Positions 8,291 to 61,216 of a DNA stretch of 64,000 nt are shown in pieces. Numbering within the stretch: the first letter of the stretch is position 1; every line of letters begins with the position of its first letter. The position numbers and the translations under genes are program-made. The stretch lies in contig CBFFRP010000080.1 in the NCBI GenBank assembly GCA_965644295.1, positions 186,001 to 250,000 of the forward strand, written 5' to 3'. This stretch comes from Paraphysomonas bandaiensis (taxonomy: Eukaryota; Protista; Chrysophyceae). The notes below the pieces were generated by a model. That model did not search any database. It was not told the DNA's origin and saw only the letters and a list, made by a program, of their open reading frames with translations.

Positions 8291-10285
8291 CTAAACACCA
8301 AATACTAGTACTACGTCAAACTGATTACGTGGCTCTATATTCAAACTTGTAGATTCTGAAAACGAATTGTGATGCCAATAAGATAAAGATGCAATGTCAT
8401 CAACGACAGACCCTGTCAAAGGCGATATCACCCGAGTAGTGGGCTGCCGAAACACAGTCAACATTAACGCTTTCTCATACTCAAGAACGACATCAGAAGG
8501 CGACGCACATGATGAAAATCGAAAGCACACCAGTCGCAAACTATCCTCCAATGACAAAACTCCGCTGACAATAGCAGCTGCATACTCTCCTAGACTGTGA
8601 CCCATCACTGCAGCTGGGCGAATACCCCGTGACAACCATACCTGACTCAGACAATACTCAAGAGCCACTAGTATAGGCTGAGAGTACGCAGTCTCCGAAA
8701 GGTACTCCGCTGCACTAACCTCAGTCAATCCGCCACAGATTCCAGGATACAATAACTCAGATGCACCTACACCCAAATGGGATCGGAGAATATCATCACA
8801 CCGACTCATAGCGTCACGAAATGTGGACTCCGATTCATACATATCGCGCAATACGCCAACACTGAGAGTCCCCTGTCCAGCAAATTGCCACACCATACCC
8901 GCTATACATGTCTCTGATGTCGTATCTGATGCGAATTGGCTGCTAGAAATAATACCAGGTGATCGGGAGTGAGAGACAGGAGCTTCCTCCAATATCACAT
9001 GAGATATTGTGCCGCTATAACCAAATGAACTCACTCCAGCTAACAAAGGACGATCCCCATGTCGAACCAATGGTGTAGGTTCCGTGGGAAACGAAATTGG
9101 ACTGCCTGATACAGATGCTGCCACCTTCGAGTTCAACTCACGCAGCTGGGCATTTGGAGGAGCTTGCTTATAATGAAGTGCCAATATCGCCGATAATATA
9201 CCTCCTATACCTGCTGCTGCCTCCATGTGACCGATATTCGCCTTCACACCAGAAACATACAATGTATTCTCTTCACTCCGCCCATGACCATATACCGACG
9301 ATAAAGCCTCCGTCTCAATAGGATCACCTAGTTTCGTCCCAGTCCCGTGAGCCTCAATAAGAGATACATCACCAGCATCCACACCAGCATCTGATAATGC
9401 CGCACGAAGAAGCTGCTCCTGGGCAAGACCATTGGGGGCTGTCAAACTAGCACTCTTACCGTCCTGCATCACTGCTGACCCTCGTACAACTGCATATATA
9501 CCATCATTATCTCGTTCTGCATCACTCAATCGTTTCAACACTAAGGCACCACATCCCTCAGCTCTGCAGTATCCGTTGGCGGATTCATCAAAGGTGTGAC
9601 ACTTTCCATCTGGTGATGTCATGCCGGCAACGGCACAGAGTACGGACGTTTTCAGTCCAATAGTATTAGATCCTGCAACCACCGCGGCGGTACAGTCCCC
9701 TCGGGCCAAACTGGCACAGGCATAATGCAAGGCAACAGAAACAGATGAACACGCCGTGTCAATCGTACAGCATGGCCCTTGTAACCCAAAACAATAGGAA
9801 ATTTTACCGGCACATGCAGATAATGAATTACTAGCGACATCGTACACTGATATGCTATCTGATACTTCAGAAAACCCAGAAATCACACTCGACTCCGTCG
9901 CTCCCATCATGCCAACAAAAACTCCTATATTTTCACCTTTCAGTTCTGAGATATCGTAGCCAGCATCTCGCAGTGCTTCGTGAGTACACTCCAAAAGCAA
10001 TCGTTGGCTCGGATCCATACAAGATGCCTCTGCATCAGAAATGCCAAACAGTGACGCATCGAAACTCTCCAGGACATCATCAGACAAGAAGCCACCATAT
10101 CGCGTACGCTCTAAAATGCTTGGGTCATTCCAGGAACTATGAGCCACCAATGAATCTACATCCCACCGATCCAGTGAAACAGTGCTTGTCATATCACGGC
10201 CCTCACATAACATACTCCACATTGATTCCAAATTATTAACATTACCAGGAAGACGGCAACTTACTCCAACGATGGCAACATTGCC
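8291..10285 (-). other. Module 5, first half: KS plus internally deleted AT
   Basis: KS intact. AT is identical to the others up to SLRLVC (about 8525), then jumps to a divergent YEK...SYW segment; IRGRLMQ...RAFH is missing. Confidence 0.85.
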
Positions 10286-13200
10286 ACTCCCATTGTATTT
10301 ATATGGCAGCACACTATCTGGCGATTCCGCAGTTGTAATCGATTCTGCCAGCCCGAGAAGATCGATTATATGCCCAGTTATTTCCCGAAGCGTTGGATAA
10401 TTAAATACCAATGTTGGTAAAACACGAACACCGAATTCAGATGCCAGTGTGCTGGCTAACTCTGTCATTGCTAAAGAGTCCAGTCCCATATCCATCACTT
10501 GGTCATCTTCTGATACGCCAGTCATTTCCAACAAAGATTCAACAACACTGCGAACAACTCGAACCACTTCTTCTTTCGACCAACCTTTGTTCACCTCCTT
10601 CGTTATAGTTTTGGAAATACTACTACGTAGAGAAACTACTCGACTATTAGAACGGCTGACGCTCTTAAACTGCGCTGATATACTTCGTGACATCCACGCA
10701 TCAGCTCCACGAGGGAGAACAGTAATCACACCATTTTTTTGACATGCACCTATCATCGTGTCTAATATCCTAGACGCAGATGATGAGTCTATGCTCATGC
10801 CTGCATCCATTCCTCCCACAGCTGCAGCCATGCCAATACCAGTAATTGCAGGCCATTGAATGCCGATACCACAAAGTCCCCTATCAACACGATACTCAAT
10901 AAGTTCATCAAGAAAGCTATTAGCTGCGCCATATGCTGATTGGCCAATATTACCGATGGCTGATGCAATAGATGAATACACAACAAAGAGCGAAAGCGAA
11001 TCATCCAACGTGTGCTTGTGTAACAACCACGCACTGTGAGCTTTAGATGCCCATACATCAGCACAACCAGATGCTGCACCACCCCCACGAATCAACGCAT
11101 CACGAAGCACTCCTGCTGCATGAATAATACCCCGAATACCCCCACCCATCTCACGGACCTCCCGTAACATATCCACAACAGATGACTCGTCAGATACGTC
11201 ACAACACATCACATGAACCTCACTGCCAGAGGACTTTTGAAGCCACTCCAATTCCGACTCAAGACCTTGGCCAGTGTATGACACCTTACCAGACCGAGAC
11301 AAAAGCACCAATCTTGACGCACCATGACCAGCTAGTATTCTTGCAGTCAAAAGCCCAAGTCCACCCAATCCACCGGTTATAATAAATGTCCCTCCTGCCA
11401 CATCGTCTACATCGTACATTTCTCTACGGCACAACTCCAGCGGCTCGTATCGCTTCACCGAGCGCACACCGTCCCGATACTTCACATCTATTTCACTTTG
11501 GAAATGCAAAAGTTCGGTCCGAACCGCTGAATGTGCACTACATATATCCGTATCAACAAGTTCGATATCCACTGTAGGGTACTCCAATTGAGCGCATCTC
11601 ATTGCTCCAGCTAAAGAACGAAGAGTAATATCCCTCTCATCAGATGAATCCACCGCTACTACCATTAATCGAGTTGCTAGGCCACAGCAAATATCAAGCA
11701 ACGACAATATGGTCGCTACTACTTCACCTCCATCAACGCACCCGTGATGTTTCGATACACTATTGAGACATAAAATCACCAAGTCATATTCTTTCAACTG
11801 TATAGACTGGTCTAGTGGCTTTTCGTTGTTATTTAAATCATACAGCTCGATGTGAGAGGGAAAATCGGGGAGAGCATCGTCACCAACTAAAGAATCATAT
11901 GACGTACTGTCGCCAACAACAAGACATGACGACATTGAGTTGGTACATCGCCCAGGATCAGTGCTACTTACTATCCAATGAGATGAAAGTTGGGAATAAG
12001 GCGTTGAGACATCGACATCAGTATTGTGCACACTGCGGGAATATAGTCCTTCCAAATAAAGAACTGCATGGCCTGAGGCAGAGAAAAGTGTAATATTAAA
12101 CACCGACATGTCTGCCGTGCATTCTCGCACTTCCACAACGACTTCACACCAATCTGATAACCAAATATGCAACAATTTATCATGCCTAAACCAAATGTGA
12201 TCTATAGCGTACGGGATTTGAGCACCATGAATATTGTTACAAAATGCATACGCCGCTGATGTTTGTAAAGCAGCGTCCAAAAGTGGAGGAGGAAGTACGT
12301 AATTCTTACTCATACCGATATCTCCAGTCGATATGCGCGACAAGACATATTTCATAGATGAATCACATCGAACTGCAGTCGCTAATCGAAACTTCGGGCC
12401 ATAAAATAAGCCATTGTCCGAAAACCGGGAATACAATGCTCCGACGTCAACTTCATCAGTACACAAAGAACGTATCGTTTCCAGACGTTTCTCCATCATA
12501 TGCCAATCAGGAGACAACTCGTCATTTACAAGTGACACTGAACAACGGGCATTCGACACCCTTGAATCACTTTGGTTACTGAACCATTCTAACTGGTTTC
12601 CGTCCGATACACACCACATACGTGTAGCAGCACTGTTTAAATCACTTCTCGTTACATTAGTTACCACTATTGGTCGGGTAATGGTAAGTGCTTCTAAATG
12701 GAGTGCAGATGTTAAATGAAGAGTACTGGTCTCCCTGATAACTGCAGCAATAGCCATGTCTATCATTCCAGCGCCTGGAAAAACTATGTCATTATGTAGG
12801 ACATGATCACGAAGCCATTCCTCTAATATTCCCACATGAAGATAGGAGTTGAAAGTAATGGTATTGGTCATTTCATTCAGTGACTGAAACTGAAAGAGAC
12901 GGTGAAAACTCTTGCGCATTTTGTAAAGTTTAATATTCGTCTGTCTAGTCGATATAACAGATGAAACTGCTTGTTTCAGAGTTGAATATCTCTCTACTTC
13001 AGTGCCAGAAAAAAAACTTAAAGTAGATGATTCGATTGTCGTCGTAGCAGCAATACGCTCACCGAGCCGCGATAAAGTTTTGTCTGCTCCCATCTCAACA
13101 AACACACAGTCACCATCACGACTCTCTCCAGTAAAACATACCTCCACTGCTGACTCATACAACACTGGCTGCAATATATGCTTCAACCAATATGACGATG

Positions 13201-60300: not shown

Positions 60301-61216
60301 CCGTGCACCATTCGTGCTCCCAAAGATTAGCAAATCCCTTAGAGTAGATCACAATATCATCAATTGTAGCTGGTATATATGCTTTATAATCGGAGTTGTT
60401 GTTCCCTGCGCAACATACTGAGTGCAGCAATGCATCAATTACGGGAGGCGGAATAATATAAGTAGAACGTAACAGCATCGTGCTTGCCAAAGAAATTTTC
60501 GATAAAATTTGTTTCGAATTCCTTCTGTACAACAAAGACTGGATGAGGCGAAAGGAATCGCCGTAATGCAGTCCCATTTTGTCCAAGCTATTATACATCT
60601 CGGAAATATTTACGGGACAAACACACTCTTCATCCCCAGTGGATGTAGTTTCCAGGATACGCTGTCGCATCATATCAGCACTAACGTAGCGATGATCATA
60701 CTCGCGAGAACACTCTATAAAAAGTATATTGGATTCATCGATGTCCGCGCCAAAAATTTCCACTCGGCCACTGCGAGATGAAATACACCAGAGGTGTGTG
60801 TTGGTATCTACCTTGCAGAGTTTGATGTGCTTGAAGTTTCGCAAACACAACAGTTCGGTTGATGCGGAATTCCCTAAGGACTTCATGCACCCCGAAACAG
60901 CAATGCTAATTCCTGCGGAAGGTGGAAAATAGTTTGAATTATTGATCGTGTAGTCCCCAAGCCAGTCGTTTTTGATGGAATCATGCAGAACAATCGAATG
61001 GATACTAGCTTCGTAAAATGGTACAAATGTACTTCTTTGTATCAACCGATCAATCTGGGTATTTGGCTTATAAGATTTGTAAAATTTTGCATCCGAAAGT
61101 GTGTCGCAGTCAAGAAGCTTGCATAGGTGAATATCTTTAGCAGATATAGTGGTCACTGTGTCTTCCGCTGCTGCGCCCAACACACCTTTCCCTTTAGGAA
61201 ACAAATATCCATCCAT
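38223..61216 (-). CDS. Giant modular type I PKS 'PKS-B' (about 7581 aa). Exons 61216-39249, 39202-39093, 39040-38973, 38922-38476, 38425-38380, 38329-38223
   Basis: Four KS, four AT, four KR, five ACP and five DH-like domains in a 22-kb exon. Five GT-AG introns of 46-52 nt restore an in-frame thioesterase; total spliced length 22746 nt is divisible by 3. Confidence 0.93.
39395..43035 (-). other. Module 9: KS-AT-DH0-ACP (no KR)
   Basis: Repeat identity ends at LVFSA (about 39742); a short unique linker then leads to ACP GLDSLGVTELA with no TGGLGGLG. Confidence 0.88.
39742..59515 (-). repeat. Near-identical intragenic tandem repeat, period 5124 bp (about 3.9 units; modules 6-9)
   Basis: Matching shadow ORFs at 39777/44901/50025/55149 and 42355/47479/52603/57727, all spaced 5124 bp. 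Units differ by scattered SNPs and one swapped KR C-terminal block. Confidence 0.95.
58475..61216 (-). other. Module 5, second half: DH0-KR-ACP at the N-terminus of PKS-B (no KS or AT)
   Basis: WLGDYTINNSNYFPP (His to Tyr at 60950-60952), VIDALLH, KR TGGLGGLG...QTAYSMSN, ACP GLDSL. Confidence 0.85.

What the first reader, a model, noticed from the sequence alone, without database searches (positions are those of the whole stretch)
8291..61216. Colinearity predicts a C20 triene-polyol, possibly a macrolactone
Seen: all intact ATs carry GHSLG plus RAFHS (malonyl-type), and there is no ER or methyltransferase. DH is intact only in modules 2-4, KR is present in modules 1-8 and absent in 9. Inference, assuming an acetyl starter and strict colinearity: 3-oxo-5,7,9,11,19-pentahydroxy-eicosa-12,14,16-trienoyl. 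The TE could cyclise via the C19-OH (20-membered ring), form a delta-lactone via the C5-OH, or hydrolyse. This resembles a small polyene macrolide scaffold from a protist.
Basis: inference. Interest (0 to 1): 0.85.

Follow-up and report, generated by a model that had tools for sequence, protein, structure and literature searches.

The report
Two-gene protist polyketide assembly line
A colourless marine flagellate carries two giant, intact genes, at least one of them transcribed, that together look like a nine-step polyketide assembly line; a C20 triene-polyol is a fair but unproven reading of its product, and such split giant synthases are already known in other protists.

Summary
The domain inventory is confirmed. 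There are two intron-poor minus-strand genes.

- **LO** (8291-30163, 7290 aa): GNAT-ACP loader, modules 1-4, then KS5 and a broken AT.
- **HI** (61216-39249 plus five small exons, 7581 aa): dead DH-KR-ACP, three KS-AT-DH(dead)-KR-ACP modules, KS-AT-DH(dead, truncated)-ACP, then a thioesterase.
- All 9 KS, 7 AT, 8 KR and 10 ACP motifs are intact.
- DH is catalytic only in modules 2-4.
- There is no ER or MT.

New evidence here:
- The loader matches CurA/GphF/SxtA decarboxylases, which supports an acetyl starter.
- RNA contigs splice five GT-AG introns that fuse the thioesterase in frame to HI.
- Contig depth fits about 4 HI repeats.
- An unsplit 8-module paralogue, already noted by this scan, lies next door.

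The C20 arithmetic is correct, but it needs several unproven things. LO must hand over to HI across a split module whose AT is dead. Module 3, which has no AT, must be loaded in trans. The repeat number must be right, and no module may be skipped or reused. LO expression was not tested. An unplaced contig holds an alternative KS5-AT5/DH2 junction.

PKZILLA-1/-2 already show a loader protein plus a TE protein with a split module. Verdict: a new member of a known kind, with a plausible, untested product.

The parts
29579..30163 (-). LO: N-terminal GNAT-type decarboxylase (loader), aa 1-195
   Evidence: PDB phmmer: SxtA 4.3e-30, GphF 8.3e-23, CurA 2e-21. His in FHVSGGA and Thr in MTRC are kept. 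About 70-100% identical to the start of paralogue N.
29288..29470 (-). LO: loading ACP (aa 232-292, Ser in IDSL)
   Evidence: PF00550 at 21.9 bits, E 2e-4; alignment with N.
24434..29278 (-). Module 1: KS1-AT1-(degenerate DH-like spacer)-KR1-ACP1; gives beta-OH
   Evidence: No Pfam DH in the spacer.
19394..24394 (-). Module 2: KS2-AT2-DH2-KR2-ACP2; gives an enoyl
   Evidence: DH His at aa 2778 region and DAALQ present.
15389..19360 (-). Module 3: KS3-DH3-KR3-ACP3, no AT
   Evidence: KS3 end joins DH3 through about 50 aa with no AT hit.
10334..15358 (-). Module 4: KS4-AT4-DH4-KR4-ACP4; gives an enoyl
8999..10306 (-). Module 5, first half: KS5 (Cys/His/His intact), the last KS of LO
8294..8965 (-). 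AT5 remnant and LO C-terminus. GHSLG is kept; the small subdomain and RAFHS are deleted; the tail is diverged; stop codon at 8291-8293.
   Evidence: Alignment; C-terminal sequence; no PKS homology downstream.
58472..61216 (-). Module 5, second half, at the HI N-terminus: about 45-aa linker remnant, DH5 (His->Tyr, dead), KR5, ACP5
   Evidence: First ATG of the frame; no PKS homology upstream.
43094..58417 (-). Modules 6-8: three KS-AT-DH(dead)-KR-ACP units with an exact 5124-nt period
   Evidence: Units 7 and 8 are 99.61% identical in DNA. Unit 6 differs only in the KR catalytic half. The KS 'window' is 100% identical among KS6-9.
39377..43045 (-). Module 9: KS9-AT9-DH9(dead, truncated)-ACP9, no KR; leaves a 3-oxo group
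38223..39202 (-). Thioesterase in five small exons (39202-39093, 39040-38973, 38922-38476, 38425-38380, 38329-38226, plus stop). It is joined in frame to HI exon 1, which ends at 39249.
   Evidence: RNA contigs of X14 and X9 skip five GT-AG introns that DNA contigs X1 and X5 keep. Motifs GYSLG, GSDDP and GDHFF. PF00975 E 0.0032 on exon 4. Atlas features place exon 4 in thioesterase clusters, score 0.92. Paralogue N has matching exons.

Best explanation
LO and HI-TE are the two subunits of one cis-AT type I modular PKS of a heterotrophic stramenopile flagellate.

Proposed mechanism:
- LO starts the chain. Its GNAT domain decarboxylates malonyl on the loading ACP to acetyl.
- Modules 1-4 add four malonyl units, giving a 9-hydroxy-2,4,6-trienoyl C10 chain.
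- KS5 at the LO C-terminus condenses onto ACP5 at the HI N-terminus, so module 5 is split between the proteins. The malonyl for ACP5 and ACP3 comes in trans from a neighbouring cis-AT.
- Four near-identical HI modules with dead DH domains then build a 1,3-polyol. The last module lacks KR and leaves a 3-oxo group.
- The spliced-on thioesterase releases the chain.

The strictly colinear reading gives 3-oxo-5,7,9,11,19-pentahydroxy-eicosa-12,14,16-trienoyl. All KRs are B-type by motif, so the alkenes would be E.

Shown here: the domains and motifs, the loader homology, TE splicing and HI expression, and roughly four HI repeats. Inferred: LO-HI cooperation, trans loading, one use per module, and the release mode. 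On chemical grounds I rate a 5,6-dihydro-4-hydroxy-2-pyrone (delta-lactone) or hydrolysis with possible decarboxylation at least as likely as a 20-membered lactone.
For: - Complementary halves. Only LO has a loader and only HI has a TE. LO ends in an orphan KS and HI begins with an orphan DH-KR-ACP.
- All catalytic motifs are intact across 14,871 codons.
- The unsplit paralogue N has the same GNAT-ACP start and the same multi-exon TE. LO KS N-halves are closest to N KS2-4 (59-68%). HI KS N-halves are closest to N KS5-8 (68-70%).
- KS6-9 share an identical variable window, as expected if all four receive beta-hydroxy chains. KS2-5, which should each see a different substrate, all differ.
- HI-TE mRNA is present and correctly spliced in culture RNA and in a polyA marine metatranscriptome.
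- Contig depth of the DH6-9 repeat piece is 4.6x (X1) and 3.8x (X5) that of the single-copy TE piece. The assembly holds 4 copies.
- Interaction model of LO KS5-AT5 remnant with HI 1-300: median ipSAE 0.46 against a best control of 0.01. The runs agree in at least 36% of contacts and partner pLDDT is at least 55. The tool rates this weak support.
- Precedent: PKZILLA-1 carries the loader, PKZILLA-2 carries the TE, and module 34 is split between them (10.1101/2024.01.29.577497).
Against: - Gene order on the coding strand is HI-TE, an 8-kb gap, then LO. It is not the biosynthetic order.
- AT5 is dead and module 3 has no AT. No discrete trans-AT lies nearby; the only other ATs in the genome are in the FAS pair, another PKS and one weak FabD-like hit.
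- LO expression, the LO 3' end and the HI 5' end were not checked with reads.
- The interaction score is in the range the tool calls more often wrong than right, and it could reflect memory of PKS module architecture.
- The unplaced contig C544 carries an in-frame KS5-AT5(N)/DH2 junction. If real, it implies an allele with three more modules.
- Five of six strain differences in the HI 3' part change the amino acid.
- Exon-wise TE similarity to known thioesterases is weak.
Confidence: 0.5

Rival explanations
1. LO and HI do work together but not strictly colinearly. Module 5 (dead AT, split) is skipped, with ACP4 handing directly to KS6, which gives a C18 analogue. Alternatively, near-identical HI modules stutter or are skipped, giving C18 to C22 or longer polyols.
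For: AT5 is broken. KS6-9 are identical in their variable window, so they cannot discriminate chain length by that region. Paralogue N has 8 modules, which gives C18.
Against: KS5, KR5 and ACP5 keep every catalytic motif, which suggests use. AT-less modules are also kept in N, so in-trans loading seems normal in this family.
Confidence: 0.25
2. One or both genes are recent, decaying remnants of duplicated N-like genes. One copy lost its 5' half and the other its 3' half. Their reading frames are kept open partly by gene conversion from N, and no joint product is made.
For: The ends fall inside a module. AT5 is a dead remnant with a diverged tail. Five DH domains are dead. Five of six strain differences in the HI 3' part are nonsynonymous. 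Homogenisation across all 17 KS C-halves and the ATs shows active conversion.
Against: There are 7290 and 7581 open codons, including long non-homogenised stretches (DH2-4, DH5, KS N-halves, KR7/8). All needed catalytic residues are intact. HI-TE mRNA is correctly spliced in culture and in the sea.
Confidence: 0.13
3. The split or the module number is an assembly artefact of a very repetitive locus. The real gene would be one contiguous LO-HI-TE gene or would have a different number of repeats.
For: The locus has 5.1-kb repeats at 99.6% identity. Leftover contigs exist: C595 is a circularly permuted repeat unit and C544 is a chimeric-looking junction.
Against: Both ends lie in unique sequence: the diverged AT tail plus stop, and the unique DH5 with its upstream flank. 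Independent DNA contigs of two data sets match 36979-40832 with at most 6 small differences (X1: 1; X5: 6 substitutions plus 3 gapped positions), and their depths fit 4 repeats.
Confidence: 0.07

Closest known systems
PKZILLA-1/PKZILLA-2 of Prymnesium parvum (10.1101/2024.01.29.577497)
   Same: A protist system of two giant PKS proteins. [quoted passage not shown] There are few GT-AG introns. In that system the module order matched the product.
   Different: PKZILLAs are trans-AT, have 56 modules with many KS0 domains, lie on different chromosomes and have a known product. Here the system is cis-AT with 9 modules, the genes sit 8 kb apart on one strand in reversed order, it has a GNAT loader, and no product is known.
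Neighbouring 8-module PKS 'N' of the same genome (C80:261337-299163, earlier finding s1-455845)
   Same: Same GNAT-ACP start. KS C-halves and ATs are 92-100% identical. It also has AT-less modules, dead DH domains, one KR-less module and a TE in small exons.
   Different: N is one unsplit gene of 12,609+ aa on the opposite strand. Its KR-less module is internal (module 6). It has two active early DHs plus an active DH8.
Mycolactone PKS (MlsA1/A2/B) of Mycobacterium ulcerans (PMC2569948, PMC2730631)
   Same: Extreme sequence identity among the modules of several giant PKS genes. Recombination among modules changes the product.
   Different: It is bacterial, plasmid-borne and has a known macrolide product. 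In the window, homogenisation spares a KS window and the reductive loops.
CurA/GphF/SxtA GNAT-type chain initiation
   Same: The GNAT-like decarboxylase followed by an ACP matches at E 2e-21 to 4e-30, with the catalytic His and Thr kept.
   Different: No adaptor or methyltransferase domain precedes the GNAT. The host is a eukaryote.
Bacterial polyene-macrolide PKSs (filipin/nystatin type; from general knowledge)
   Same: A run of DH-KR modules (polyene) followed by a run of KR-only modules (polyol), a hydroxyl near the starter end that could close a lactone, and malonyl extender units.
   Different: Only a triene, and only C20. No P450, glycosyltransferase or other tailoring genes were seen in the flanks. 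Macrolactonisation is untested.

Membership tests
Modular (assembly-line) type I cis-AT PKS | Several KS-AT-(reductive)-ACP modules in one polypeptide | tested here: met
   Pfam and seed BLAST: 5 KS in LO and 4 in HI, with AT, DH, KR and ACP in module order.
Modular (assembly-line) type I cis-AT PKS | Condensing KS (Cys-His-His) in every module | tested here: met
   DTACSS, HGTGT and NIGH are present in all 9 KS.
Modular (assembly-line) type I cis-AT PKS | A functional AT in every module | tested here: not met
   7 of 9 modules have one. Module 3 has none and module 5 has a remnant without the small subdomain and His. The family label holds for the other modules; these two need loading in trans.
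Modular (assembly-line) type I cis-AT PKS | Each module used once, in order (colinearity) | not testable with these tools
   This needs the product structure or in vitro work.
Modular (assembly-line) type I cis-AT PKS | Terminal release domain | tested here: met
   The TE exons are spliced in frame to ACP9. Ser, Asp and His motifs are present. PF00975 is weak on exon 4. Atlas features score 0.92 for thioesterase clusters.
CurA-type GNAT loading module | GNAT-like decarboxylase with catalytic His/Thr, followed by an ACP | tested here: met
   PDB phmmer E 4e-30 to 2e-21 over aa 6-187. ACP at aa 244-280.
Malonyl-specific AT | GHS[LVI]G and xAFH motifs, as opposed to GHSQG and YASH | tested here: met
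   GHSLGE and RAFHS in all 7 intact ATs. This is motif-level evidence only.
PKZILLA-like bipartite protist PKS | Loader on protein 1, TE on protein 2, one module split between them | tested here: met
   Domain order; precedent text.
PKZILLA-like bipartite protist PKS | The two proteins physically cooperate | tested here: inconclusive
   Complex prediction gave weak support: 0.46 against a best control of 0.01.
PKZILLA-like bipartite protist PKS | trans-AT architecture | tested here: not met
   ATs are integrated in 7 modules.
Polyene macrolide pathway | Macrolactonising TE and tailoring genes (P450, glycosyltransferase) | tested here: not met
   No such Pfam families in flank ORFs, only a WD40 gene. 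TE chemistry cannot be tested here.

The most novel reading that the evidence does not exclude
The locus may be a natural example of gene fission of a cis-AT assembly line by duplication and complementary loss. The split module 5 would work in trans. The roughly 45-residue post-AT/KS-DH linker remnant at the HI N-terminus would dock onto the KS5-linker-AT stump of LO. The product would be a so far unknown small triene-polyol (a dihydropyrone or a 20-membered lactone) made in the sea by a widespread bacterivorous flagellate.
Probability: 0.2. Interest if true: 0.7.

Novelty: new member of a known kind. Interest (0 to 1): 0.45.

Why it matters
No polyketide is known from this kind of heterotrophic flagellate, yet the HI-TE transcript turns up in polyA marine metatranscriptomes. 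The locus gives a concrete mass and chromophore to search for. It is also a compact cis-AT counterpart to the PKZILLA split, which makes it a tractable system for three questions: how eukaryotic megasynthases pass a chain between proteins, how they serve AT-less modules, and how they evolve by module duplication and gene conversion.

Tried and rejected
- tblastn of both proteins against the window found no PKS pieces outside the two ORFs. Three-frame reading of the LO 3' flank and the HI 5' flank found none either.
- blastn of the flanks found only short dispersed repeats. There is no promoter or flank homology between LO, HI and N.
- Pfam on ten flank and gap ORFs found only WD40.
- The search for homologous proteins with LO 1-730 gave only bacterial PKSs at 34-51% identity. 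With HI 1-300 it gave no hit; the length filter applies, so neither blank says much.
- Exact-pattern scans of metagenome contigs for the C544 junction and for the LO 3' coding tail both found nothing.
- Exon-wise TE searches against the PDB and against TE-bearing bacterial PKSs were not significant.
- Complex prediction gave only weak support.
- The joined (spliced) TE or HI-TE model was not searched or folded. The exons were searched one by one by reference, and the reading frame was checked by exon arithmetic only.
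Full report
**What is there**

The window is G000:C80:186001-250000. Pfam finds only KS, AT, PS-DH, KR and PP-binding families in both. It finds no enoylreductase, methyltransferase or in-ORF thioesterase.

Seed BLAST and regex give the domain order:
- **LO** = GNAT-ACP / KS1-AT1-KR1-ACP1 / KS2-AT2-DH2-KR2-ACP2 / KS3-DH3-KR3-ACP3 / KS4-AT4-DH4-KR4-ACP4 / KS5-AT5(remnant)-stop.
- **HI** = linker-DH5-KR5-ACP5 / three KS-AT-DH-KR-ACP units with an exact 1708-aa period / KS9-AT9-DH9(truncated)-ACP9.

**Motifs**

- All nine KS carry the Cys/His/His residues.
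- Seven ATs carry GHSLGE and RAFHS, the malonyl type by motif.
- AT5 keeps GHSLG but has lost the small subdomain and the His motif. It continues as a diverged tail and stops.
- Module 3 has no AT at all.
- The DH histidine and aspartate are present only in DH2-4. DH5 has Tyr for His. DH6-9 have Tyr for His and Glu for Asp, and DH9 is cut short.
- KR1-8 have the NADPH motif and the K/S/Y/N residues. They carry an LRD or VRD motif, which is B-type.

Acetyl plus nine malonyl with that reduction pattern gives the stated C20 acyl chain.

**Starter and release**

LO aa 6-187 match the GNAT-like decarboxylases of SxtA (4.3e-30), GphF (8.3e-23) and CurA (2e-21). The catalytic His and Thr are conserved and an ACP follows. 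This supports an acetyl starter made from malonyl-ACP.

The TE is not in the ORF. Just before the HI stop codon a GT donor opens a 46-nt intron. Four more introns of 50-52 nt follow. RNA contigs from a polyA marine metatranscriptome (X14) and from a culture of 'organism B' (X9) skip exactly these five GT-AG introns. DNA contigs (X1, X5) keep them. Exon arithmetic keeps the frame and gives one 7581-aa HI-TE protein.

The TE exons carry GYSLG, GSDDP and GDHFF. Exon 4 gives a weak PF00975 hit, and its language-model features place it among thioesterase clusters at 0.92, with all ten best hits in that family. Exon-wise sequence searches against the PDB and against bacterial TE domains are not significant.

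I did not search or fold the joined model. The exons were searched one by one by reference.

**Do the two proteins belong together?**

On the coding strand the order is HI-TE, then 8 kb without recognisable genes, then LO. This is the reverse of the biosynthetic order. Neither flank holds further PKS exons. So LO truly ends in an orphan KS plus an AT stump, and HI truly begins about 45 residues before a dead DH.

Only LO can start a chain and only HI can release one.

An unsplit paralogue 'N' lies 14 kb upstream of HI on the other strand (12,609-aa frame, 8 KS; earlier finding s1-455845). It has the same GNAT-ACP start and a TE in a matching set of small exons.

In the non-homogenised N-terminal parts of the KS domains, LO KS1 equals N KS1. 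LO KS2-5 are closest to N KS2-4, and HI KS6-9 are closest to N KS5-8. LO and HI therefore correspond to the front and back halves of an N-like gene. One origin that would explain the order is tandem duplication followed by complementary loss; this is inference.

The HI N-terminus aligns with the short KS-to-DH linker of the AT-less modules, including its K-x-Y element before the HRLL-like start of the DH. This suggests a docking role.

A complex prediction of LO KS5-stump with HI 1-300 scored a median 0.46 against a best control of 0.01. The runs agree in at least 36% of contacts and partner pLDDT is at least 55. The tool itself rates this as weak support.

The precedent is close. PKZILLA-1 has the loader, PKZILLA-2 has the TE, and module 34 is split between them. 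That system's module order matched its product.

**Internal consistency of the colinear reading**

The C-terminal half of all 17 KS domains and all ATs of the three genes are 92-100% identical, which points to gene conversion. A roughly 60-residue window before the active-site Cys escapes this homogenisation. It is identical in KS6-9, which should all receive beta-hydroxy chains. It is different in each of KS2-5, which should each receive a different chain. This fits one pass per module but does not prove it.

**Assembly**

HI units 7 and 8 differ at 20 of 5124 nt. In two independent DNA data sets the collapsed contig for the DH6-9 piece has 4.6x and 3.8x the depth of the single-copy TE contig. 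The assembly holds 4 copies. This is a rough check.

Two unplaced contigs show that the assembler struggled here:
- C595 is a circularly permuted repeat unit of N.
- C544 joins KS5-AT5 (first about 122 aa) in frame to DH2-KR2-ACP2-KS3. There is no microhomology at the join. The junction lies four codons before LO's own AT5 break, and the join lacks the first DH strand. It is either a chimera or an allele with three extra modules. I could not test which.

**Weak points**

- LO expression, the LO 3' end and the HI 5' end were not checked with reads, because the one read-laying run went to the TE region.
- No discrete trans-AT lies nearby, so ACP3 and ACP5 must be loaded by neighbouring ATs.
- Five of six strain differences in the HI 3' part are nonsynonymous, but they fall in the dead DH and linker.
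- The release mode cannot be predicted. A 3-oxo-5-hydroxy thioester lactonises easily to a dihydropyrone, and a free beta-keto acid would tend to decarboxylate (general chemistry, inference).

**Novelty**

Multimodular PKSs with module duplication and AT loss are documented in algae (PMC4661987). Type I PKS genes are widespread and expressed in marine heterotrophic protists (10.64898/2026.04.17.719054). The loader/TE split with a shared module is known from the PKZILLAs. Module homogenisation is known from the mycolactone PKS.

No close relative was found in the protein collection; the best hits are bacterial at 34-51% identity.

I file this as a new member of a known kind. It has an interesting cis-AT split and a testable product hypothesis. 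My estimates are about 0.5 that LO and HI-TE form one line, and about 0.3 that the product has exactly the stated C20 pattern.

Noticed in passing
L008 (G000:C544:1-4248); junction at base 2706: An unplaced 4.2-kb contig joins LO KS5-AT5 (N-terminal about 122 aa) in frame to DH2-KR2-ACP2-KS3. Its arms are 99.5-99.96% identical to window 8533-10074 and 19196-21901, with no microhomology at the join. The junction is four codons before LO's own AT5 break. It is either a chimera or an allele with a 3-module internal duplication.
   Followed up: partly
L009 (G000:C595:1-5052): An unplaced contig that is a circularly permuted single 5.05-kb module repeat of the neighbouring PKS N. It is an assembler leftover and a warning about repeat counts in N.
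   Followed up: partly
window 8999-61216 and C80:261337-299163: The C-terminal half of all 17 KS domains and all ATs of the three PKS genes are 92-100% identical. A roughly 60-aa window before the KS active-site Cys and the reductive loops stay module-specific. This is concerted evolution with protected islands.
   Followed up: partly
window 36580-37010; also 34553-34671, 35379-35507, 672-776, 64927-65064: A dispersed repeat family of about 140 bp, with very high word depth in DNA runs (up to about 93,000 summed depth in X5, against 115 for single-copy DNA).
   Followed up: no
window 3127-5423 (+): Exons of a WD40 beta-propeller gene downstream of LO. It is probably unrelated housekeeping.
   Followed up: no
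window 113222-114151 in extended coordinates (C80:299222-300151, +): The thioesterase of paralogue N lies in a matching series of small exons, 35-46% identical to the HI TE exons. The multi-exon TE therefore predates the duplication.
   Followed up: partly
window 39253-40699: Five of the six differences seen among the public runs in the dead DH9 and C-terminal linker of HI change the amino acid. This suggests relaxed constraint on these non-catalytic parts.
   Followed up: partly
window 24434-27016 (LO aa 1050-1560): Module 1 has a roughly 500-aa AT-to-KR spacer that starts with an HRLL-like motif but gives no Pfam DH hit. It is probably a decayed DH plus the structural KR half.
   Followed up: partly
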